Positions 1,826-18,822 of a stretch of 18,822 nt of DNA are shown one piece after another. A program made the position numbers and the translations under genes. The stretch comes from Macrostomum lignano (Eukaryota), in the NCBI GenBank assembly GCA_002269645.1, contig NIVC01001207.1, forward strand, positions 1-18,822, written 5' to 3'. Within the stretch, counting starts at the first letter, position 1, and every line of letters starts with the position of its first letter. The notes beneath the pieces are model-generated. The model saw only the letters and a program-made list of their open reading frames with translations, did not search any database and had not been told where the DNA came from.

Positions 1826-3614
1826 GGGTCCTAGTCATTTACTCAATTGGTGTTTGTGTTTTGTCAACTGGCCATTTTGTCAACTCAGTTTTTGCATTGG
1901 TCATTTTGTCAACTAGCCAATGAAACAGTCTCCAACCTTGGTCATTTCGTCAATTGACCAACAGGGAGTTCCCCAACATTGGTCACTTTGTCAACTGCCA
2001 ATAAACTACCCCTGCCACTAGTAGCCACAAAAATACTAAAACTAAACTATGAAATGACTAAGTTGACAGGCTAATTAATATTTATATCTAGATACCCTTC
2101 TGTGCAACATCTGCCAGTTTCAATTGATGCATCTCTGACTATACATTTACATCTGACTATACATTTACGTGTTTGAAATGTGGAATGTGGCCAAGTCTTA
2201 TGTAGCTGAGCAGGAATGCACAAATCAAAAATGTGCCACTATGATACTATGCCTAATATTGCTCCACTTGCACTTGCAGCCAATCATACTACCCCCAATG
2301 CTGCCTACCACTCCTGTATTCCTTGTTGCACTAGCGCGGTGTGCATAGGTACCAGCAGCGCCTCCAAGTGGAGCAGTTGAATGAGAGGATACAGGATAAG
2401 TTGCACTCTTCTAGCCTACTGCTTCAGTCGCTGATGCCAGCCTTTTACCTTGTTGTTTGTCCGAATGGACTAGCCATAAATGTTTATTTCAGCAGCGCTA
2501 TGCACTAAGTTGGTCAGCCATGTACTATTGACATACTTAGCTAGGTCCAATAAAAGCAGCACTTGCACTTGGGTGACAACTTATATTAGGCTGCGTTGTT
2601 CATATGCTAGTACAGCAGGTAGGGCAGGCCCATCAGCATCCTGGTGAAATTCCAGAAAAAAAGGGTCTTATTAGGTAGGCCTGTTGCAATCCTAGATATT
2701 GAACGCGACAAAATATTTCCTATGCGTAGTGAAAAAGGCAGCCTTGAAGCTAACAATAAGGAAGATGGCTCACAAGGCCTGCCATCCAGTAGCTCAAAGT
2801 TCAGTATGCAGACTTCAGGTGTTGTGTTACCAATTGCCTCCTGCAACAATTGAAATACAACAGTATAGTTGTTGATAGCCTTGCCTGACATAGCGAATGC
2901 CAGGGGCATTGGTTTGACTGACATTGTTCCTTGCTGGATATAGCAGTACACAGAGTAGAGTTGCTTGAATGGTGCATGGATGACATCAAAAGTGCCATCT
3001 AGAAACTATAGCCAATAAGATGCCAGCAGCTTGATTTGATTGGTAGTAAAAAGTAGCAAATGGTGCTTGCTAGTTCCTTCAACTCGAATGTTAGCCTGAA
3101 CAAAATCTGGAGGGATAGGGTCCATAGCCAGATTGAACTGGAGGTCAGATAGGGGGCACTGGATACTCAGCTTCCCAAGCTCTGTTTGCAATGCGCACCA
3201 GTTGACAAATAGTAGGTACTTTCTGGCCAAAGATTCATTGATGCCCGGATGCATATAGGTATGAGTTTGCATATATAGGTGATGCATTTGCATCTAGAGT
3301 ATTTGCATCGGAACATTTAACCTATCGAATATATGTATAAATAGGCATGCAGTTAACATATACTATATTGTAACAAAATTGCAAAGTTTGATTGTTTCAA
3401 ATAAAATTAGGTAATTATTAAAACAAACTCATCAATATAAAAATTATTAAGCTACGCTGCTGTATAAACTAAATATCATTCATATAATAACAATTTTGGT
3501 CACTTTATCAACAAGCAAATAGGGAAGACCTAGGCATTAGTCACTTTGTCAATCACCAGTAAAGTTGCCTTAACTGAGTTGATGAAATACCAATTGATGA
3601 AATGACTATCACCC
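1826..3614 (-). mobile_element. Mutator/MULE DNA transposon, internally deleted and decayed
   Basis: Imperfect TIRs: GGGTCCTAGTCATTTACTCAATTGG at 1826 versus reverse complement of the right end GGGTGATAGTCATTTCATCAATTGG. 8-bp TSD with one mismatch (GCTTGCTA 1818-1825 / ACTTGCTA 3615-3622). Multiple subterminal copies of a ~16-bp GGTCAYTTTGTCAAYT motif at both ends. Internal MULE transposase remnant. Confidence 0.85.
2320..3255 (-). pseudogene. MULE (Mutator-like) DDE transposase remnant
   Basis: Minus-strand translation across stops and frameshifts gives, in order: DLQFNLAMDPIPPDF..HHLLLFTTNQIKLL..DGTF (2999-2988; first Asp), PFKQLYSV..PLAFAM..Y..VF..L, NFE (normally DFE; second Asp), GCLFH (2743-2729; CxxH), VQYLGLQQAY, RMLMGLP, RTNNKVKGWHQRLK (2463-2434; normally RTNNxxEGWH). 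Several in-frame stops. No N-terminal DNA-binding region seen. Confidence 0.9.
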
Positions 3615-4504: not shown

Positions 4505-4967
4505 ATGCCATCTCAACAGGACGACACTGAGCTGCTTCAGCCGCTTCTAAATGAAGCAGATGCTGCAGAAGCTGATGCATCAATGCAACAGGAGCAGCAA
4601 ATATCCTCAACAAATCCTGATGCCAGTTCAGATGGCCGGCAGCAGCAGCAGCAACAGACCAATCCTCGTATTCCAGTTTTAACTCGCACCCGAGCCTGGT
4701 TCTGCACCCGCTTAGCCAATGCGCGTCGAGATAGCGAGCTGCTGGACCCCTATCAGGAGGCCAGCCGCAACCTGCCAGCAGCGGTTTGCTCCGGTTGCGT
4801 GCTGGCACTGCTGGCCATGTCCAGCGGCGCGGCCGATTGGTTCTACACGCGAGGCGGCGGCTGTAATCGGGTGTACATTGGCACCGGCGCATTCCTAGCC
4901 AATGGCGAATTGTTTCAACGAACCCGTGGCGATGCCAGTAGTCTGGTGTGGCGCGTTGGCGACGATT
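4505..4967 (+). CDS. TMEM127: TMEM127 orthologue, coding exon 1
   Basis: ORF from ATG 4505. SRNLPAAVCSGCVLALLAMSSGAADWFYTRGGGCNRVYIG resembles human [40 protein letters not shown] (recalled from memory). Donor T|GTAAGC at 4968, phase 1. The start codon is the first in-frame ATG; an upstream exon cannot be excluded. Confidence 0.85.
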
Positions 4968-5194
4968 GTAAGCGAGATTGGATCTTAAGGGGCTTTATTT
5001 GTTTATCTAATTAGATGGCGATGCATTTATATAGCTTAAAAAAGTCATAGTTACTCCCGCCGTCTACCCAGAACATTAGAACGTGGCTTTTCCTAGAAAA
5101 TCATCTGCATCTCCTGCTTAGGCTTGACTTAAATTGGGGAGTTAATTGTCATAAACAATACTGGTATGATAGTAATAATATACTACTATATACT

Positions 5195-6070: not shown

Positions 6071-6935
6071 TCCCTGTTCTCAAGTATTCTCCCCTGTTTC
6101 TCTCAAGTATTCTCCCCTGTTCCTCCCAAGTATTCTCCCCTGTTCTTCCCAAGTATTCTCCCCTGTTCTTCCCAAGTATTCTCCCCTGTTCTTCCCAAGT
6201 ATTCTCCCCTGTTCTTCCCAAGTATTCTCCCCTGTTTCTCTCAAGTATTCTCCCCTGTTCCTCCCAAGTATTCTCCCCTGTTCTTCCCAAGTATTCTCCC
6301 CTGTTCTTCCCAAGTATTCTCCCCTGTTCTTCCCAAGTATTCTCCCCTGTTTCTCTCAAGTATTCTCCCCTGTTCCTCCCAAGTATTCTCCCCTGTTCTT
6401 CCCAAGTATTCTCCCTTGTTCTTCCCAAGTATTCTCCCCTGTTTCTCTCAAGTATTCTCCCCTGTTCCTCCCAAGTATTCTCCCCTGTTCTTCCCAAGTA
6501 TTCTCCCCTGTTCTTCCCAAGTATTCTCCCCTGTTTCTCTCAAGTATTCTCCCCTGTTCCTCCCAAGTATTCTCCCCTGTTCCTCTCAGATATTCTCCCC
6601 TGTTCCTCTCGAGTATTCTCCCCTGTTTTTCTCAAGTATTCTCCCCTGTTCTTCCCAAATATTATGCCCTGTTCTTAGATATTCTCCCCTGTTCCTCTCA
6701 AGAGTTCTCCCCTGTTCCTCTTAAGTATTCTCCCCTGTTCCTCTCAAGTATTCTCGCCTGTTCTTTCCAAATATTCTCCCATGTTCTCAGATATTCTCCC
6801 CTGTTCCTCCCAAATATTCTCCCCTGTTTCTCCCAAATATTCTCCCCTGTTCCTCCCAAATATTCTTCCCTGTTCCTCCCAAATATTCTTCCCAAATATT
6901 CTGCCCTGTTCTCAAATATTCTCCTTTGTTCTCCC
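6071..6935. repeat. 23-bp minisatellite (CAAGTATTCTCCCCTGTTYYTCY)n in TMEM127 intron 2
   Basis: About 21 near-perfect 23-bp units from 6081 to 6563, followed by progressively diverged units to ~6935. Confidence 0.95.
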
Positions 6936-7002: not shown

Positions 7003-7583
7003 CTCTGGTCTGCGTCACGGCTTGCGGCTTGACCTATTGGGCCGCAGAATTAATCCGAGGTGTACAAGAAGCCACTCAGCTGCGACCGGACAGTCACGTG
7101 ACAGTGTCCCTGTGCTCTGGTTACTATCTAGTTGGAGCAGCCGGTCTCCTATCAATATTAGCCGCCGCATTCAACTGTCTTCATCAGCCTAGGCATATCA
7201 GACGATTGAGGATGTCGCTGACACAGACTCCGGCATCTTCGGCTAGATCGTCGCGTTCCAGACGGCATCGCCGTCGCTCTCAGTCGCAGTCGCAGTCGCA
7301 GTCTAGTAGATCCCGACGTTCTCTATGGCCATTCCGGTTGCGCAACAGGCTGAGCTTGAATAGCGGCGATGTTGTTGTCAATTCGAATCAGCCGTCGGCA
7401 CAGCCGCCGAGCGCTTATCCCGACGACGGCTTAGGACCTCCGCCGGATGACGAGTTCGACGAGGCGCAGCTGTTGCTGGGCATAGCGGATTACGATCCGC
7501 CGGCTTACGAAGTTGAGTTTGGAGAGCAGCCACAGCAGCAGCCATCTGAAGCTGACACTGATGTGGCACCTGTGCAGCCTTAG
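7003..7583 (+). CDS. TMEM127: TMEM127 orthologue, coding exon 3 (to stop TAG 7581-7583)
   Basis: Acceptor CTGATCAG|CT (7001-7002), phase 1. Encodes LVCVTACGLTYWAAELI..SHVTVSLCSGYYLVGAAGLLSILAAAFNCLH, resembling human [49 protein letters not shown]. C-terminal PPAY motif. Exons sum to 1215 nt = 404 aa plus stop. Confidence 0.9.
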
Positions 7584-7850
7584 TTTGTAAACATAAAAAA
7601 ACTGTTTAACACATGTCATTTAATGATCATAGAGCAGATGTTCCAGGTAAAAAAGTTTAATTACTTTTCTTCTGTCTGTGCATGTATGCATAATGCATTC
7701 TATTGTTTATCTACCCAGCTTTGTAACAACAGTAATTTATGTCTACACTGGCATTGTTTGTAATGTTAATCAGTCTTTACTGTGGGGCTGTTGGTTCTAT
7801 CTAGTATAGGCATGATATTCGTATTGTGCCATATTTATTCATACTGTGTC

Positions 7851-8390
7851 CTAGGGTTTCTGGTACTGTCACTCTGTGATGGTGTACAAGGGTTTCTGGT
7901 ACTGTCACTCTGTAATGTGTACAAGGGTTTCTGGTACTGTCACTCTGTGATGGTGTACAAGGGTTTCTGGTACTGTCACTCTGTAATGTGTACAAGGGTT
8001 TCTGGTACTGTCACTCTGTGATGGTGTACAAGGGTTTCTGGTACTGTCACTCTGTAATGTGTACAAGGGTTTCTGGTACTGTCACTCTGTAATGTGTACA
8101 AGCGTTTCTGGTACTGTCACTCTGTAATGTGTACAAGGGTTTCTGGTACTGTCACTCTGTGATGTGTACAAGCGTTTCTGGTACTGTCACTCTGTAATGT
8201 GTACAAGGGTTTCTGGTACTGTCACTCTGTAATGTGTACAAGGGTTTCTGGTACTGTCACTCTGTAATGTGTACAAGGGTTTCTGGTACTGTCACTCTCT
8301 ATGCTCTGTACAGGTTTTTCTGGTACTGTCACTCTCTATGCTGTGTACAAGGGTTTCTGGTACTGTCACTCTCCATTCTGTGTACAAGTT
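7851..8390. repeat. 35/36-bp minisatellite (CAAGGGTTTCTGGTACTGTCACTCTGTAATGTGTA)n downstream of TMEM127
   Basis: 15 tandem units counted by hand. No unique spacers. Confidence 0.95.
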
Positions 8391-12470: not shown

Positions 12471-13478
12471 ACACTAATAACTTTTTTATTTCTTGTTCGT
12501 TTTTTCTGAAATATATATCATTGTAAAGATTAGTTCATACTCTTTCTAAAAGGTATAACTTTTGCATGGATAGATTCCGAAAAATATTGTTTATCTGCAT
12601 TTGAATATAGTACCCCCCATTGAACAGAAAAATCGTGATTTTTTACTTTTTTGCGATTTATTTGAACTCTTTCATGCTAAATTGATAAAAAGTTATATTT
12701 TTCTACGTATTTTAGACTTTTTTAATTAAGCAATCATTTACGAAGGTAAAAAATCCTGTTTTTTTTAAACAGACCTCATATTTTGTTCATTTCAGATTTC
12801 TTCAAAGGGACCTTCGCTTCCTAAACTTGCCTGTATTTCACCATTATACCACGATTTAAAAAAAATCAAGGTACCACTAGTTTCGTCTACTGCTCTTCTT
12901 GCTATATTATTGGTCATTTTTAAACATTAAAGAAGAAAAAGCGAAAAATTCAAGAAATAGTAAAAAAAAGTCCATTTTTCTGCAAACAAATTCTGCAAAT
13001 ATTCTGTTTCTTTTTTTCTTACCATACTCATATGTTTCTACTTCAAGTAGATGAATCCAATATGCAGAGAAAAATGCTGTAAGTTCTTAAAATTTTGTTG
13101 AAAACAATCATCTCGTTCTGAGTCTGCAGAGTCTGATGACTCTGAGCACTGAGTCATCACTGGGCCCCTTGACACAACCAGCAAGATGGGGCCGCTAAAC
13201 CCTCCCTAAAAAAGGCTCATTGGGTGCGCCTGTGCGCTTAGTATACATATTGAATACTTGTATTGCATACATTTTGTACACATACACATTGCAAAAGAGG
13301 CCACAATCCAACATTTCTCTGGGGCTAGGTCTAAACTTAATGTATACAGGCTCAAGAAGATCTTTGAAGAGAGTGCAAAACTAATTGCCACATAGGCCCA
13401 ATCGATGGCAGGCAATCGGCTGACCCTTTTTATAGGTTTAAGATATGTGCGCAGTATAATAGAGTAAACGTCTTAATA

Positions 13479-13649
13479 CAAGGGCATATAGCCAGAATTT
13501 CTAATTGGGCGGATGGGCAAGCTTGGTGGCAAGAGGGGGGGGGGAGCCAAGCCCACTGGCAATGGGGCGCTACATACTTTTACCAGCCTGGGGGGTGGGG
13601 GCGCAGCTCCCTCTTGCCCCCGACTCCTGGCAGCCAGGCTATAATACTG
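13479..13649. mobile_element. Degenerate GC-rich MITE, similar in style to 10767-10943
   Basis: Ends CAAGGGCATATAGCCAGAATTT ... CAGCCAGGCTATAATACTG share a TATAGCC/GGCTATA inverted core. G-run-rich interior. No clear TSD. Confidence 0.5.
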
Positions 13650-14536
13650 ACCTGACTTACATATTTGCGATACTGTACACAGACTATAGGCGCCAAACTC
13701 GCAGAGGCCAACTAGAGATATAGGCTCGTACATGTATACGCGAAATAGAAATACAAAAAGCAAATGCTACATACATATATGTAATACATAATTATAACTC
13801 AGCAAGAATAGCTCATCCTTAAATATTCCACAGTAATTAATATGCCGAAAGATATTAAAGATATAGACTCGAATGCACTCAAACTTTATTGAGTTTGTTT
13901 TTATGCTTCAGAATATTTGAAATGACTAAATTCGCTGGCCAATGATTAAGCCTATAAGGCACTACAAAAACGTAACTACATGTATTGTCATTCTTAATTG
14001 GATAGAAGCTAGGCCTTTTGACATTGATAGCTTCCAGGATATTGCTCAATTCCTTCTCGTCGTGACTCAAAAAGTGACAGTTGCATTTTTAATTTCTTTT
14101 TAACTGTCACCTTTCTTCCTTGGCTTCGTCGGCAGGGGCTTTTTTAACCGAGAAGGAGGCCCTTCCCTGCCGCAGCAGCAAGCATATCTTCCGCACTATC
14201 AGTTTGAGTTCATCTTTAATTATAAAAAATTCTGACATTAGTCAGGCACATAAAATAAATCCAATGGTTTTGTATAAGAACGCATAATGTTTCTATTGGG
14301 ATTACAAGTAAAAGTATTACAGTTCCATAAAAAATTTAAAGGCTTATTAAAACCTACTGTATCTAGCTCGTATGTTTTCCCATTGTTGATAATAGGCTTT
14401 TGACCCAAATTTAAATTAATGTGCGTTGGAAATGCTTGTTGCTGAGTCACCAAGTCAAAAGTCACCAATATTACGCTCGTAAGATTTATAGACATATATA
14501 GCGCCATGTATCAAGACAAGGAAAATTAATGATAAT

Positions 14537-16045
14537 GAGCAGTCAGTATGCAGTAATTTTTAGTGCGAATGTGCTGAAGCAAAATAGGCAAGCAATGCTT
14601 GTAATTTTTTTGTTTTTCAATTTTGAGTACAGTGCAAAGATGGGAGAGGGGAGCTGAGAGATGATAGGCGGAGATGAAAGAGAATAAAGAGGAAGGGAGA
14701 GGGAAGAAAGAAGATGAAAAAGGGGGTGAGAGGATAGGGCAGAATGGAGAAGGGAGAGAGGCCGGAAGATGAGAAAGGAGGGAAAAAGGAGATGAGAGAG
14801 GAGAGGGAAGAAGGGAGATGATAGGGGAGATTGGAGAGAGGAGATAGGGAAGATGAGAAAGGAAATGAGAGCGGAGAGGGAGAGGAGAGAGGAGAAGGGG
14901 AGAGAGGAAAGGATGGTAGAGAGGAGAGGGGATAGAGGGATGAGAGGGAAGATGATAAGGGAGAGAAGAGAGAAGCGACAGAAGAGGGTGAGAAGAGAGC
15001 GAGATGACAGCTGAGGAGAGGAGAGGAGAGGAAATATAGATGAGAGAGCTTGAGTCAGTGAGCAGTCATTTTAGTGCGAATGTGCTGAAGAAAAATAGGC
15101 AAGCAATACTTGTAATTTTTTGTTTTTTTTTTAGATTTTAAACTTTTGATGAAAGTCTTGTGCATGGTGATGTTTGATAGAAGCAATGTACAAGTCAAAG
15201 TGAGTTAGTATTCATTATGATTTAAATAGAGAGTGCAGGTTAGGCAATGAGGCAATTGTTGAACAATGCAGGAAATTAAATGAAAGTTAATGAGCAATCA
15301 GTGTGCAGTAATTTTTAGTGCGAATGTGCTGAATCAAAATAGGCGAGCAATACATGTACTTGTAATTTTTTTGTTTTTTTTTTCAATTTTGAGTACAGTG
15401 CAAAGATAAAGAGGGAAGATGAGAGGTGAGAGGTGAGAAAGGAGATAGAGAGCGGATGAGAGGGGAGAAGGGAGATGAGAGAGGAGAGAGAAGGGAAAAG
15501 CGAATAGATTAGAGTCAAGCTGAGAGATGATAGGCGGAGATGAGAGAGAAAGAAAAAGGGAGAGGGGAGAAAGGAGATGAAAAAGGAGATGAGAGGATAG
15601 GTGAGAATGGAGAGAGGCCGGAAGATGAGAAAGGAGGGAGAAAGGAAATGAGAGAGGAGAGGGAGAGGAGAGATGAGAGAGGAGAAGGGGAGAGAGGAGA
15701 GGATGGTAGAGAGGAGAGGGGATAGAGGGATGAGAGGGATGATGGTAGGGGAGAGAAGAGAGAAGCGACAAGAGAGGGTGAGAAGAGAGCGAGATGACAG
15801 GGGAGAGGAGAGGAAATATAGATGAGAGAGCTTGAGTCAGTGAGCAGTCATTTTAGTGCGAATGTGCTGAAGAAAAATAGGCAAGCAATACTTGTAATTT
15901 TTTTGTTTTTTTAGATTTTAAACTTTTGATGAAAGTCTTGTGCATGGTGATGTTTGATAGAAGCAATGTCAAAGTGAAGTTAGCATTCATTATGATTTGA
16001 AGGTTAGGCAATGAGGCAATTGTTGAGCAATGCAGGAAATTAAAT
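14537..16045. repeat. Tandem duplication of a ~755-bp composite unit (14537-15291, 15292-16045)
   Basis: Each unit is a ~70-bp motif (GAGCAGTCA..TTTTAGTGCGAATGTGCTGAAGAAAAATAGGCAAGCAATACTTGTAATTTTTT), a ~400-bp polypurine tract, a second motif copy and an AT-rich spacer. Motif copies start at 14537, 15060, 15292 and 15842, with a partial fifth at 16046. Confidence 0.9.
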
Positions 16046-16130
16046 GAGCAGTGAACGGTCATTTGAGTTCATAAAATTCATAAAATGTGATAGAACGATG
16101 GGGACGTAATTTCTAGGCCTAGTGATCAAC

Positions 16131-17239
16131 TCAGTGAATAAGGCGGCTGCGAGCATTCATGAGCTGATCACGGGTCCAGAGGAATCCAGGATTCCTTCCC
16201 GTAGGAAAATGGGGATTGGGTAAAACTGCGACCTCACTCACCAATGCGCTGAACTCGTCACTCTTGGCCGGGAATATGAATGGCTTTTGACCTCCAGCCA
16301 TCCAGTTTGTCACCGACTGAGTGCAGGCAGAGACAACGACTTGGCCATCGCCCTGGAGTTGAATGACTCGACACGGGTAATGCTGCCAAGCTTTTCGTCC
16401 TCTGCAAGTTGCCTGCACGGCAACCAGCACCCAGCAGTCAACGCTTAGCTCCGGCAGAGGTAGCGGCAGCATCGGCAGATAGTGCAGCTCTGGGATGTGC
16501 GCCAGCTTGATTGGTTGCCCTTCTGGGTGGCGATCCTCTGGCATGATGACTACCGGCTCCGGACGGTCAGGCTGGTAAATCTGAAAAGGCCTGTCTAAGA
16601 AATTGGCTAATGCAACGATAATAAGATGATCAGCATAGGTACTTGAACGTTTCATTTTTTGTAAATAGTCATTAAGTGGCATTTCCAAAAAGTCAACGAT
16701 ACTCTCACCATTTACATAGGAGTTTTGCTCTAGGAAAGCGCAGCTGTCTGATCGAAGTCTGTCGGCGTCGGAATTGATGCCTTCGGAACTCAGCACCTGC
16801 CGGACGGAGTCAAAAAAACAATTTCCAAAAGAATCTGCCTTACCTAAGGAGCAATTCAACGACTTCGCCTTGCTCTCAAGCCGACCTAAAGCGACGGACA
16901 TATCCAGCACGGCAGATTGGGCGACCGGTTGCTCAGCTGCGACCGTCTGCTTCGACTGCAGTCGCCGGGAACCTTGACGCTGACGCTGCTGTGCCCGAAG
17001 CCTCCGAGCGGTCTGCCGTGCGGCCTTGGCGTCCAGAGCAGCCTGACGCTTTTGCTGTCTTAGTCTGAAAAAGGCTAAAGTAGAGCGGCTAGTTAAGTTA
17101 GGATGCGGAATGTCCTGGTAAACGGACGTTCTTCTTTTCTTGCCGGAAACTGGAGTCCGGTTCCGCTTTATCGGGAACGCCATCGACTCGGCTGTTTCTC
17201 GAGCTGCGGGTGATACTGACGTCACCGAGCAAAAGGCAC
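16131..17239 (-). CDS. Last exon of a pogo/Fot1-like transposase gene: basic LTS helix + OTU-like cysteine protease domain + Tudor-like C-terminal domain
   Basis: Intact ORF of >364 codons. Acceptor TTTATTTCGTTCAG|GT at 17241-17240, phase 1. KKRR..NLTSRSTLAFFRLRQQKRQAALDAKAARQTARR resembles the post-DDE basic helix of DDE_1 transposases. OTU Cys box ADSFGNCFFDSV (Cys codon 16820-16818), helix YLQKMKRSSTYADHLIIVALANFLDRPFQIY, His box IKLAHIPELHY (His codon 16484-16482). Followed by LSVDCWVLVAV..HYPCRVI..FIFPAKSD, a Tudor-like pattern. Confidence 0.8.
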
Positions 17240-18163
17240 CTGAACGAAATAAATAATTTGTAGCTCAAACTTAGCAATCATGAAGAAAAAAATATATATG
17301 AATGATGAAGTCGATAAGCTTTTAAGTTAATGATCAGATATAAAATATAGCGCATGACTGTGTAACATAGACAGGAGATGAGAAAGAAAGAAGGGAGAGA
17401 GAAGAGGGGGAAATAAGGAAGATGAGAGGAGAGGGGAGAAGGGAGAGGATGGGAGAATGGAGAGAAGGGGAGAAGGGAGCGAAGAGGGGAGAAGGAGAGG
17501 AGGGGAGAAGGAGAGGAGGGGAGAAGGAAGAGGAGAGGGAGAAGGGAGAGGAGGGAGAAGGAGAGGAGGGAGAAGGGAGAGGAGGGAGAAGGGAGAGGAG
17601 AGGGGAGAAGGGAGAGGAGGGGAGAAGGGAGAGGGGGGAGAAGGAGAGGAGGGGAGAAGGGAGAGGAGGGAAAGGGAGAGGAGGGGAGAAGGGAGAGGAG
17701 GGGAGAAGGAGAGGAGGGAGAAGGGAGAGGAGAGGGGAGGAAGAGAGAGAGGGAGAGGAGGGAGAGAAGGGAGAGGAGGGGAGAAGGGAGAGGAGGGGAG
17801 AAGGGAGAGGAGGGGAGAAGGGAGAGGAGGGGAGAAGGGAGAGGAGGGGAGAAGGAGAGGAGGGGAGAAGGGAGAGGAGGGGAGAAGGGAGAGGAGGGAG
17901 AGGGAGAGGAGAGGGAGAAGGGAGAGGAGGGGAGGAGGGAGAGGAGAGGGAGAAGGGAGAGGAGGGGAGAAGGGAGAGCAGAGGAGAGAAGGAGGGGGAG
18001 AGAGGAGAGAGGAGAGAGGAGAGGAGAGAAAATTAGGAAGATGGTCTTAAAGTAGTGTACAATGTAATTTACAGTGTCACATCTTTTACGTCTTTAACGT
18101 GAAATTTACTTGTATACTATACGTTAATTTGAGTTTACTTTTCAAAATTTACCGACTACTCAC
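17240..18163 (-). other. Predicted 924-nt intron of the transposase-OTU gene
   Basis: Donor TCTG|GTGAGT at 18163 and acceptor TTCAG| at 17240. Phases are compatible (1/1) when the upstream exon ends in the frame reading ..DEDTVEAVEPQSEDLLDAERQS-G. Confidence 0.65.
17373..18032 (+). repeat. Polypurine minisatellite, ~17-bp unit GAGAAGGGAGAGGAGGG
   Basis: No pyrimidine found between 17481 and 17978 (498 nt) on +. Clear 17-bp periodicity at 17765-17900. Confidence 0.95.
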
Positions 18164-18822
18164 CAGACTGTCTCTCTGCATCGAGCAAATCCTCACTCTG
18201 TGGTTCAACCGCCTCGACGGTATCCTCATCGAGAGAGGGATGATGCAGTGGGCTGCTCTCGATCTGTCCTCGCTGTCAGTGCTCTGCTGGTCGGAGCTCA
18301 CGTGCTCGTCACTGATCTGTTGGCAGTTCACCTGTCCGGTCAGGCGCAGCAGCAGCTGCTGCAGTACGCGATCATTGTCGGTCGTTGCTGGCTTCGTTTG
18401 CAAGTCGTGAAGCTTAGCGGTGCCAAGAACATCCTCGAAGCAGCGCTCCACAGAGCCTGAGGCTGTTTGGCACTTTTTTGATTTAAATTTTTTCTGTGGG
18501 AGGCTAGAGGTGGGGGCGGTGTTGCTTGCTTTTAGCACGCATTCACAATCCTTCTCACCTGCTGCTTGCTGCTTAGGAGCCGGGTCTTGCCGCTTGCAGA
18601 GCTTGTCATACGCTAGAGCATCAGGGTTCCGCGGAAAAATGCCACTTTTTCGGAAGCCAGCCATGATGTTCTGCGGAGTAGCCCGCTCTGCCAGGACCTC
18701 GCGGAGCATATCACGAATCGCAGCTGGTGACAGAGTCTCCAATCGCCAGCACTCCGGGACCTGTCGGCGAGAAGCTCGCGCCATCCCATCTTGACGGGAC
18801 GAAACACAGCGAGGTCCAGAGG
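18164..18822 (-). pseudogene. C-terminal part of a DDE_1 (pogo/Fot1/CENP-B-like) transposase catalytic domain with two apparent -1 frameshifts; 5' part lies outside the window
   Basis: From the window edge the minus strand reads PLDLAVFRPVKMGWRELL (the QPLD..VF.P.K..W motif carrying the last catalytic Asp). After a frameshift near 18735-18760 it reads LSPAAIRDMLREVLAERATPQNIMAGFRKSGIFPRNPDAL (the conserved NI.xGF.x.GI.P.N motif). A second frame change near 18260-18280 leads to the splice donor. Confidence 0.85.

What the first reader, a model, noticed from the sequence alone, without database searches (positions are those of the whole stretch)
16131..18822. pogo/Fot1-like DDE transposase fused to an OTU deubiquitinase-like domain and a Tudor-like domain
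Seen: DDE_1 C-terminal motifs (18822-18590), a phase-compatible intron, then one intact exon carrying the transposase-typical basic LTS helix followed in frame by OTU Cys and His boxes and a Tudor-like tail. The LTS helix and the OTU share one ORF, so the link to a transposase does not rest on the splice model alone. Established: many invertebrate and fungal DDE_1 transposases carry a PHD finger or nothing at this position. Ubiquitin/SUMO-type proteases are known as cargo in Helitrons (OTU) and in Zisupton and plant MULEs (Ulp1). I do not know of a described pogo family with an OTU inside the transposase, but cannot check the literature. Inference: the element may carry its own deubiquitinase to stabilise the transposase or alter ubiquitinated chromatin at target sites, with the Tudor-like domain reading histone marks. 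Alternatively it is a domesticated gene.
Basis: partly seen in the sequence, partly recalled or inferred. Interest (0 to 1): 0.85.

Follow-up and report, generated by a model that had tools for sequence, protein, structure and literature searches.

The report
Pogo-type transposon carrying a deubiquitinase domain
The window ends in a slightly broken copy of a pogo-type "cut-and-paste" transposon whose transposase has an OTU ubiquitin-protease domain built into its tail; such fusions are known in other transposon groups, but I found no report of one in pogo.

Summary
On the minus strand, 18822-18164 encodes the C-terminal end of a pogo/DDE_1 transposase. A GT..AG intron-like gap (18163-17240) follows, and then an intact 364-codon ORF (17225-16131). 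That ORF holds a conserved "LTS" basic helix, an OTU domain and a conserved about 100-aa tail. The OTU domain passes Pfam's cut-off, is modelled with pLDDT >90, and matches OTUD3/OTUD5 folds.

The link does not rest on the splice model. Two independent public contigs carry DDE_1 and OTU in one uninterrupted ORF (P0001, 644 aa; P0071, 838 aa, intact, with HTH_psq and HTH_Tnp_Tc5).

- The transposase part needs two frameshifts, near 18711 and within 18275-18258. The 18164/17239 junction is in phase only after the second one, so this copy is most likely a dead transposon copy.
- "Tudor-like" is unproven. The tail has no sequence match; the low-confidence model gives non-significant matches to SH3-like/Tudor barrels.

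OTU fused to transposases is already described for Ginger1, Medicago MULEs and Helitrons. Two large pogo surveys do not mention OTU. Verdict: a new variant of a known kind, of moderate interest. Deubiquitinase activity and any role in transposition are inferred, not shown.

The parts
18712..18822 (-). End of the DDE_1 catalytic domain, frame -1: PLDLAVFRPVKMGWRELLAD...LRFV. It includes the QPLD-type third acidic residue (D at 18816-18814). It is cut by the window end.
   Evidence: tblastn with the L001 protein gives 25/37 identical residues, E 2e-9. The aligned L001 residues lie inside its Pfam DDE_1 match, 219-352.
18710..18711 (-). Frameshift 1. Two leftover bases sit between ...LRFV (frame -1) and MLREVL... 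(frame -3). Relative to L001 this is equivalent to a 1-nt deletion in one codon.
18302..18709 (-). Transposase region after the DDE domain, then a variable linker, in frame -3 (MLREVLAERATPQNIMAGFRKSGIFPRNPDALAYDKL ... SDEH).
   Evidence: tblastn with L001 residues 359-474, E 1e-17. Identity is 67% over the AGFRKSG block and 31% in the linker.
18258..18275 (-). Zone holding frameshift 2 (frame -3 to frame -2).
   Evidence: Frame -2 is open only from 18275. SSPLHHPSLDEDT aligns with STPLPENFADDDT of L001.
18164..18257 (-). Acidic linker in frame -2 (SSPLHHPSLDEDTVEAVEPQSEDLLDAERQSG). It ends at the splice donor, phase 1.
17240..18163 (-). Probable intron of 924 nt (GTGAGT...TTATTTCGTTCAG). It is AT-rich at both ends. 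Its middle is a 17-nt CT-rich (GA-rich on the + strand) tandem array at 17424-18027.
   Evidence: Sequence, phase, tandem array. Removing it restores colinearity with L001...ERQSG|AFCSVTSVS against ...EGRQFSPLESVS. There is no RNA evidence.
16131..17239 (-). Last exon: an intact reading frame to stop codon 16133-16131. It encodes the basic NLS-like patch, LTS helix, basic helix, OTU domain and tail.
   Evidence: 45% identity to L001 over 378 columns, E 1e-83
17058..17144 (-). GKKRR basic patch and the conserved TSVYQDIPHPNLTSRSTLAFFRLR ('LTS') motif.
   Evidence: Near-identical in L001. An analogous P-x-V/L-x-T/S-S plus basic helix occurs in the OTU-less pogo transposase P0113 and in P0071.
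16464..16913 (-). OTU domain (ORF aa 105-254). Catalytic Cys136 is at 16820-16818 (FGNCFF). His248 is at 16484-16482 (PELHY).
   Evidence: Pfam OTU. AlphaFold2 pLDDT is 90-97 over this stretch. Foldseek matches OTUD5, Otu2, OTUD3 (TM 0.84) and OTUD1, with E about 1e-8 to 1e-7. PDB sequence search hits OTUD5 at E 0.002.
16134..16439 (-). Conserved C-terminal tail (aa 263-364), predicted mostly beta. It may be an SH3-like/Tudor-like barrel followed by a helix.
   Evidence: It is 55% identical to the L001 tail, P0003. The model has pLDDT 60 and five strands. Foldseek matches are non-significant (E 0.1-0.5), to bL19 and to the TDRD4 and PHF20 Tudor domains.

Best explanation
This is the 3' two-thirds of a copy of a pogo-superfamily cut-and-paste DNA transposon in an animal genome. 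A TMEM127-like host gene lies about 9 kb away.

The family's single protein is a transposase with this order of parts: HTH_psq/HTH_Tnp_Tc5 DNA-binding domains, the DDE_1 catalytic core, a variable acidic linker, a conserved 'LTS' basic helix, an OTU-type cysteine protease, and a conserved beta-rich tail of about 100 aa.

Shown:
- The architecture, and its recurrence in two unrelated public contigs.
- The OTU fold, with Cys and His in place.
- Stronger conservation of the DDE end, LTS, OTU and tail than of the linkers between two elements whose synonymous sites are saturated. So the OTU and tail were selected parts of the element as it diverged.

Inferred:
- The OTU acts as a deubiquitinase travelling with the transposase. 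It would either remove ubiquitin from the transposase itself, protecting it from the proteasome, or trim ubiquitin marks of the DNA-damage response or chromatin at the excision and integration site. This is the idea earlier authors proposed for Ginger1, MULE and Helitron proteases.
- The tail could be a targeting or oligomerisation module.

The window copy itself is most likely dead. It has two frameshifts in the transposase part, and the rest of the gene lies beyond the window end. The 924-nt interruption is most likely a true intron whose middle was swollen by a 17-nt tandem repeat.
For: - Fusion elsewhere: P0001 (644 aa, one ORF on L001) has Pfam DDE_1 and OTU. P0071 (838 aa, intact ORF on L002) has HTH_psq, HTH_Tnp_Tc5, DDE_1 and OTU.
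- The window is colinear with L001 in three segments.
- OTU: Pfam 33.9 bits; model pLDDT >90; Foldseek OTUD5/Otu2/OTUD3 at E about 1e-8.
- Cys136, His248 and the E-x-H-Y motif are kept in the window, L001 and P0071.
- Selection: pN is 0.27-0.33 in the DDE end, LTS, OTU and tail, against 0.49-0.51 in the linkers, with pS 0.66-1.09.
- Transposon-like decay: the window has two frameshifts. L001 has one in-frame stop, one frameshift, and N in place of the second catalytic D.
- Intron: consensus GT/AG sites, phase 1, and colinearity restored on removal.
Against: - No terminal inverted repeats or target-site duplication could be examined. The 5' end lies outside the window, and neither L001 nor L002 shows terminal repeats.
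- Copy number in the source genome is unknown.
- There are only three examples in total, so the family is rare or poorly sampled.
- The Asp of the usual DGNC motif is Phe in the window and Tyr in L001. It is Asp in P0071. Catalytic competence of this subfamily is therefore uncertain.
- P0071's OTU is only about 26-29% identical to the window's, no closer than the other OTU relatives in the alignment. One acquisition versus two is unresolved.
- L001 has no gap where the window has its intron. It is unknown whether L001 is genomic or transcript-derived, so the intron is not proven.
- No activity data exist for any transposon OTU (PMC9741609).
Confidence: 0.78

Rival explanations
1. Domesticated host gene. 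The OTU-plus-tail exon, with or without remains of the transposase, is now a cellular gene kept by selection. The intact 364-codon ORF would reflect that.
For: The last exon is intact over 1.1 kb, while the upstream 660 nt carry two frameshifts. It has consensus splice sites. Pogo transposases are often domesticated (PMC7386202).
Against: No close orthologue appears among about 15 billion proteins. The best hit is 46% identical and is itself broken. No upstream exon in frame gives a start without the broken transposase part. The only internal ATG (aa 15) would give an orphan protein. The relatives look like transposon copies with full transposase domains.
Confidence: 0.1
2. The 924-nt gap is not an intron. 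It is a satellite or other insertion into a dead, originally intronless copy, and the GT..AG ends are coincidence.
For: L001 and L002 have no interruption between DDE_1 and OTU. Two-thirds of the gap is a 17-nt tandem array like the arrays just downstream at 14.7-15.8 kb. The copy is already broken.
Against: Both ends match full splice consensus (G|GTGAGT; T-rich tract plus CAG|G). The ends are AT-rich and unique. Removal is in phase, and it restores residue-level colinearity with L001. Ginger1 transposase genes carry 1-4 introns (PMC2836005).
Confidence: 0.22
3. Chance neighbours. A pogo fragment lies next to an OTU exon from another element (Helitron or Ginger1) or gene, and the two are not part of one protein.
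For: OTU domains are common in other transposons. Among the OTU relatives, 3 carry rve and 1 carries a hAT dimerisation domain. The window's own join depends on two frameshifts and a splice model.
Against: The same order (DDE end, linker, LTS, OTU, tail) is found in L001 within one contig, with DDE_1 and OTU in one ORF, and again in P0071. No Rep/Hel or rve domain appears in these relatives.
Confidence: 0.02

Closest known systems
pogo superfamily DNA transposons (Tigger / pogoR / Fot-like; Pfam HTH_psq + HTH_Tnp_Tc5 + DDE_1)
   Same: The relatives carry HTH_psq, HTH_Tnp_Tc5 and DDE_1 with FNxDE, (L/F)xD and QPLD motifs. The window has the QPLD...FRPxK...AGFRKSG end of that domain.
   Different: A long C-terminal extension with an enzymatic OTU domain and a conserved tail. 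Two broad pogo surveys never mention OTU, protease or ubiquitin (PMC7386202 and PMC7325037).
Ginger1 DNA transposons (Bao, Kapitonov and Jurka 2010, PMC2836005)
   Same: A DDE-type cut-and-paste transposase with an OTU (or Ulp1) protease fused at its C-terminus. The genes have introns and the elements occur in invertebrates. The proposed role is in ubiquitin-dependent steps of transposition or repair.
   Different: The Ginger1 core is a Gypsy-integrase-like (rve) domain with YPYY, H2C2 and GPY/F motifs, not DDE_1 with HTH domains. Here the OTU is followed by a further conserved tail.
Helitron/Helentron RepHel proteins with OTU (and VTD) domains
   Same: Animal transposon proteins carrying OTU-family domains with catalytic residues kept. 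Activity of transposon OTUs is untested (PMC9741609; PMC6431247).
   Different: These are rolling-circle elements with Rep and helicase domains and no DDE transposase. No Rep/Hel is seen in the relatives here.
Medicago MULE transposases with a C-terminal OTU-superfamily protease (Babu et al. 2006, PMC1702500)
   Same: A C-terminal fusion of an OTU-superfamily protease to a cut-and-paste transposase.
   Different: A different transposase superfamily (Mutator, with WRKY-GCM1 DNA binding), in plants. The authors suggested polyprotein processing. No conserved Gly-Gly type site is seen here.
Cellular OTUD-type deubiquitinases (OTUD5/DUBA, OTUD3, OTUD1, yeast Otu2)
   Same: Best structural matches of the modelled domain, with TM up to 0.84 normalised to the target. 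Cys and His boxes are present.
   Different: Only 14-18% identical. The Asp of the DGNC motif is replaced by Phe. The H-x-N/D third residue is not present; instead there is the E-x-H-Y motif that the consensus of these OTU relatives also shows.

Membership tests
pogo superfamily transposon | DDE_1 catalytic domain with three acidic residues | tested here: inconclusive
   The window holds only the last part, with the third acidic residue (PLD at 18822-18814). There is no Pfam hit on the fragment alone. It is 68% identical to the DDE_1 end of L001. P0071 has all three motifs. L001 has N at the second.
pogo superfamily transposon | N-terminal HTH_psq / HTH_Tnp_Tc5 (CENP-B type) DNA-binding domains | not testable with these tools
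   These would lie beyond window position 18822. They are present in the relatives L001 (HTH_Tnp_Tc5) and P0071 (both domains).
pogo superfamily transposon | Terminal inverted repeats and TA target-site duplication | not testable with these tools
   The 5' end is outside the window. No inverted repeats were found in 13000-18822 or spanning L001 or L002.
pogo superfamily transposon | Multiple dispersed copies in the genome | not testable with these tools
   The source genome is not available. No second copy is in the window. Exact-protein look-ups found nothing.
OTU deubiquitinase | Sequence match to the OTU family above the curated threshold | tested here: met
   Pfam PF02338 scores 33.9 bits against a cut-off of 23.3, E 5e-8. 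OTUD5 is hit in PDB by sequence, E 0.002.
OTU deubiquitinase | OTU papain-like fold | tested here: met
   AlphaFold2 pLDDT is 90-97 over aa 105-254. Foldseek finds 93 PDB matches at E<=0.001. The listed top 50 are nearly all OTU-domain proteins (OTUD, otubain, A20, viral and bacterial OTUs), and the best matches are OTUD5, Otu2 and OTUD3.
OTU deubiquitinase | Catalytic Cys and His present | tested here: met
   Cys136 lies in FGNCFF and His248 in PELHY. Both sit in nearly invariant columns of the OTU alignment.
OTU deubiquitinase | Asp three residues before the Cys (DGNC motif) | tested here: not met
   The residue is Phe in the window and Tyr in L001. It is Asp in P0071. The position also varies (G/S/Q/N/E) in other relatives. 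It is not essential in all OTUs (my own knowledge), so this lowers but does not remove the case for activity.
OTU deubiquitinase | Hydrolysis of ubiquitin or ubiquitin-like conjugates | not testable with these tools
   This needs a biochemical assay. Transposon OTUs had not been tested as of PMC9741609.
Tudor domain | Sequence match to Tudor, chromo, Agenet or a related family | tested here: not met
   No Pfam hit besides OTU at E<=1. A profile search of PDB gave nothing at E<=10. The only relative in 5.8 billion protein clusters is the L001 tail.
Tudor domain | Five-stranded SH3-like beta barrel | tested here: inconclusive
   The tail-only model has mean pLDDT 60 and five strands. The best Foldseek matches have E 0.1-0.5: ribosomal protein bL19, TDRD4 Tudor and PHF20 Tudor (TM 0.74 to the target). 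None reaches E<=0.001.
Tudor domain | Aromatic cage for methyl-lysine or methyl-arginine | not tested
   Model confidence is too low to place side chains.
Ginger1 transposon | Gypsy-integrase-like (rve) core with YPYY, H2C2 and GPY/F motifs | tested here: not met
   The relatives carry DDE_1 and HTH_Tnp_Tc5, not rve.
Helitron/Helentron | Rep (HUH) and helicase domains | tested here: not met
   None is found in L001, P0071 or the window part.

The most novel reading that the evidence does not exclude
An undescribed lineage of pogo transposons in invertebrate-type genomes has made an OTU deubiquitinase, plus a beta-barrel tail, an integral and selected module of its transposase. At least one member (P0071) is an intact 838-aa ORF. 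This would be the first enzymatic ubiquitin protease in the IS630-Tc1-mariner/pogo group. It would be a fourth independent capture of OTU by transposons, after Helitron, Ginger1 and MULE. That argues that removing ubiquitin is a general need of eukaryotic DNA transposition. A small one-protein system would make this directly testable.
Probability: 0.45. Interest if true: 0.65.

Novelty: new variant of a known kind. Interest (0 to 1): 0.5.

Why it matters
Transposons from unrelated superfamilies (Helitron, Ginger1, MULE, and now pogo) repeatedly pick up ubiquitin or SUMO proteases. No transposon OTU has been assayed, and its role in transposition is unknown. A pogo-type element is the simplest setting in which to ask the question: it has one protein, a cut-and-paste mechanism, and cell-based assays already established for relatives such as Passer. 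If the Cys mutant of an intact family member transposes less well, or its transposase is less stable, that would link deubiquitination to transposase stability or to repair of the excision site. For genome annotation, the result also warns that OTU exons near DDE_1 fragments in invertebrate genomes may be transposon parts rather than host deubiquitinase genes.

Tried and rejected
- Word-indexed protein search with the 364-aa ORF found nothing. The exhaustive HMMER search was needed.
- Searching with the window+L001 alignment gave only P0001 plus OTU-less pogo transposases. The tail profile gave only P0003.
[quoted passage not shown] BLASTP found nothing. hhalign gave E 0.13 and probability 0.5%, although the aligned motifs look alike. 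I do not claim homology.
- A short 38-nt 'mini-intron' (18301-18264) as an alternative to frameshift 2. Rejected as too short, and because the unspliced length matches L001.
- Rfam found nothing in the window.
- No inverted repeats in 13000-18822 or in L001-L003 that could be element ends. The 19-nt repeat of L001's 5' region is absent from the window.
- Exact-protein look-ups for the window ORFs, to find the source organism, found nothing. The run accessions of the related contigs appear in no paper.
- The metagenome scan returned only distant pogo relatives without OTU.
- P0006, a close OTU relative, sits on metagenome contigs with unrelated neighbours. I dropped it.
- dN/dS proper could not be computed because synonymous sites are saturated. 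Only the pN contrast between domains and linkers is used.
Full report
**What is in the sequence**

All features lie on the minus strand.

- Positions 18822-18712 read PLDLAVFRPVKMGWRELLADRSRSAGDWRLCHQLRFV in one frame.
- After two stray bases (18711-18710) the sense continues in another frame. It reads MLREVLAERATPQNIMAGFRKSGIFPRNPDALAYDKL..., followed by a poorly conserved linker down to ...SDEH at 18302.
- A third frame, open only from 18275, reads SSPLHHPSLDEDTVEAVEPQSEDLLDAERQSG. It ends at a consensus donor G|GTGAGT (18164/18163).
- A 924-nt stretch follows. It is AT-rich and unique at both ends, and it holds a 17-nt CT-rich tandem array at 17424-18027. It ends in TTATTTCGTTCAG|G (17240/17239).
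- From there a reading frame runs without interruption to the stop at 16133-16131. The ORF listing reports it as a 364-aa ORF, 16131..17225.

**Checking the splice claim**

The donor at 18164 is phase 0 in the long open frame (-3). Joining that frame to 17239 gives VPFAR-stop. The donor is phase 1 only in the short frame -2 stretch, and phase 1 is what the OTU frame needs (G + GT = Gly, then AFCSVTS...).

**The OTU domain**

- Pfam OTU matches ORF aa 134-227 at 33.9 bits, against a cut-off of 23.3.
- AlphaFold2 was run on aa 95-364 with a 35-row alignment. It gives pLDDT 90-97 across aa 105-254.
- Foldseek against PDB returns 93 matches at E<=0.001. The best are OTUD5/DUBA, yeast Otu2, OTUD3 (TM 0.84 to the target, rmsd 2.2) and OTUD1.
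- Sequence search of PDB also finds OTUD5.
- Cys136 (FGNCFF) and His248 (PELHY) sit in the nearly invariant columns of the OTU alignment.
- The Asp usual in DGNC is Phe here. This is a caveat for activity.

**Is the OTU really part of a transposase?**

The exhaustive HMMER search of 1.84 billion cluster representatives gave one strong relative. P0001 has E 4e-58 and 46% identity, and it aligns from ORF residue 2 onward starting at its own residue 349. P0001 carries Pfam DDE_1 (6-104) and OTU (480-578) in one 644-aa ORF.

Its contig is L001 (Logan SRR30276804, 3.2 kb). On one strand it carries HTH_Tnp_Tc5, DDE_1, OTU and a 77-aa ORF (P0003) that matches the window's tail at 56%. tblastn of the L001 protein against the window reproduces all three window segments in order:

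| Window segment | Identity | E-value |
|---|---|---|
| 18822-18712 | 68% | 2e-9 |
| 18739-18380 | 36% | 1e-17 |
| 17234-16146 | 45% | 1e-83 |

Homology resumes 5 nt after the proposed acceptor.

A second, more distant example is P0071 (L002, Logan DRR639055). It is an intact 838-aa ORF with HTH_psq, HTH_Tnp_Tc5, DDE_1 and OTU. So the physical link between a pogo-type transposase and an OTU domain does not depend on the window's splice model.

**Transposon or domesticated gene?**

- L001 is itself damaged. It has one in-frame stop in DDE_1, one frameshift before the tail, and N in place of the second catalytic Asp.
- The window copy has two frameshifts.
- No near-identical orthologue exists in the protein collections.

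This pattern fits decaying copies of a mobile family.

The comparison between the window and L001 elements also shows past selection. Synonymous differences are saturated (pS 0.66-1.09). Non-synonymous differences are 0.27-0.33 in the DDE end, LTS motif, OTU and tail, against 0.49-0.51 in the two linkers. The OTU and the tail were therefore functional parts of the element while the two lineages diverged.

**The tail**

The tail is conserved: 55% identity to L001, with invariant W, YPCRVI, GQKPF-FP and PTGR-GFLW.

- It has no other relative, no Pfam hit and no PDB sequence hit.
- Modelled alone it reaches a mean of 60, with five strands and a terminal helix.
- Foldseek then gives only E 0.1-0.5 matches. 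They are a mix of SH3-like barrels: ribosomal bL19, TDRD4 Tudor, PHF20 Tudor and SH3 domains.
- An OTU-less pogo transposase, P0113, ends in a tail with a similar motif pattern (F-V-I-F, FPGQIL, W-K-W-P-K-D-D-D, DPP...SRG). The profile comparison is not significant, E 0.13.

'SH3-like/Tudor-like barrel' is a reasonable guess, not a finding. Histone-mark reading is speculation.

**The intron**

For an intron:
- full consensus at both ends
- AT-rich unique flanks
- correct phase
- restored colinearity with L001 (...ERQSG|AFCSVTSVS against ...EGRQFSPLESVS)

Against an intron:
- L001 and L002 have no gap there, and it is unknown whether they are genomic or transcript contigs
- most of the gap is a tandem array like those just downstream

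I put about 0.7 on an intron.

**Comparison with what is known**

- OTU domains fused to the C-terminus of a DDE transposase are described for Ginger1 in Hydra, Aplysia and aphid. The genes have introns, and the authors suggest a link to ubiquitin-dependent repair (PMC2836005).
- A fusion to MULE transposases is described in Medicago (PMC1702500).
- OTU and VTD domains are known in Helitrons and Helentrons. That paper states that transposon OTUs had not been tested for activity (PMC9741609; PMC6431247).
- Among the window OTU's own relatives, three carry rve and one carries a hAT dimerisation domain. This OTU type is common cargo of mobile elements.
- Two broad surveys of pogo diversity do not contain the words OTU, protease or ubiquitin (PMC7386202, PMC7325037). 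Full-text searches for the combination found nothing else.
- I could not query Repbase, Dfam or InterPro.

**Verdict**

This is a real feature, correctly spotted in outline. It is a degraded, window-truncated copy of a pogo-type transposon whose transposase carries an OTU domain and a conserved tail. It is a new variant of a known kind (protease-bearing transposases), not a new principle. Deubiquitinase activity and its role in stabilising the transposase or editing ubiquitin marks at the transposition site are inferred by analogy.

Noticed in passing
window 7029-7583 (+), probably with upstream exon(s) near 4505-5014: Host gene. The ORF matches the C-terminal part of Pfam TMEM127 (E 1e-12, profile positions 64-113 of 113). 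The window therefore comes from an animal genome, and the transposon copy lies about 9 kb downstream on the other strand.
   Followed up: partly
window 6081-6893 and 7845-8372: Two long tandem arrays flank the TMEM127-like exon: 23 nt x 35.6 copies at 89% match, and 35 nt x 14.9 copies at 93% match. The first creates spurious ORFs of up to 306 aa on both strands.
   Followed up: no
window 14506-16047: A two-copy tandem duplication with a unit of about 770-790 nt (pieces 83-97% identical). It contains GA-rich microsatellite blocks and ends about 85 nt past the OTU ORF's stop codon. The GA-rich blocks resemble the array inside the intron at 17424-18027. Whether it belongs to the element's 3' region is unknown.
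   Followed up: partly
window 2607-2951 (-) and 3006-3293 (-): Two adjacent ORFs of about 100 aa in a locally GC-richer patch. Neither has a Pfam match. They may be remains of another mobile element.
   Followed up: partly
L001 2-134: Six tandem copies of a 19-nt unit (CGTTGCTTAAYTACTTRAA) lie just upstream of the transposase start. They look like subterminal transposase-binding repeats. They are absent from the window.
   Followed up: partly
L001 (protein residues about 229 and 297): The related element has an in-frame stop in DDE_1. It also has Asn where P0071 and P0113 have the second catalytic Asp (LFTNLHD against MFTDLHS and LFLDGHS). That copy is therefore also inactive.
   Followed up: yes
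proteins P0007, P0013, P0020 and others among the OTU relatives: The nearest OTU relatives include other mobile-element proteins: three with integrase (rve) cores (Ginger1-like or retroelement) and one with a hAT dimerisation domain. P0007 (836 aa) has an unannotated N-terminal part and the same HIPELHY His box as the window. Others are large kinase, Roc-COR, Mab-21 or TPR proteins, as in expanded invertebrate immune-type gene families.
   Followed up: partly
P0113 (L003 412-2685): An OTU-less pogo transposase of 757 aa has the same kind of long C-terminal extension: an acidic linker, a P-x-V-x-T-S plus basic helix, then a beta-rich tail with a motif pattern like the window's tail. This suggests the OTU was inserted into a pre-existing extension. 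The similarity is not statistically significant.
   Followed up: partly
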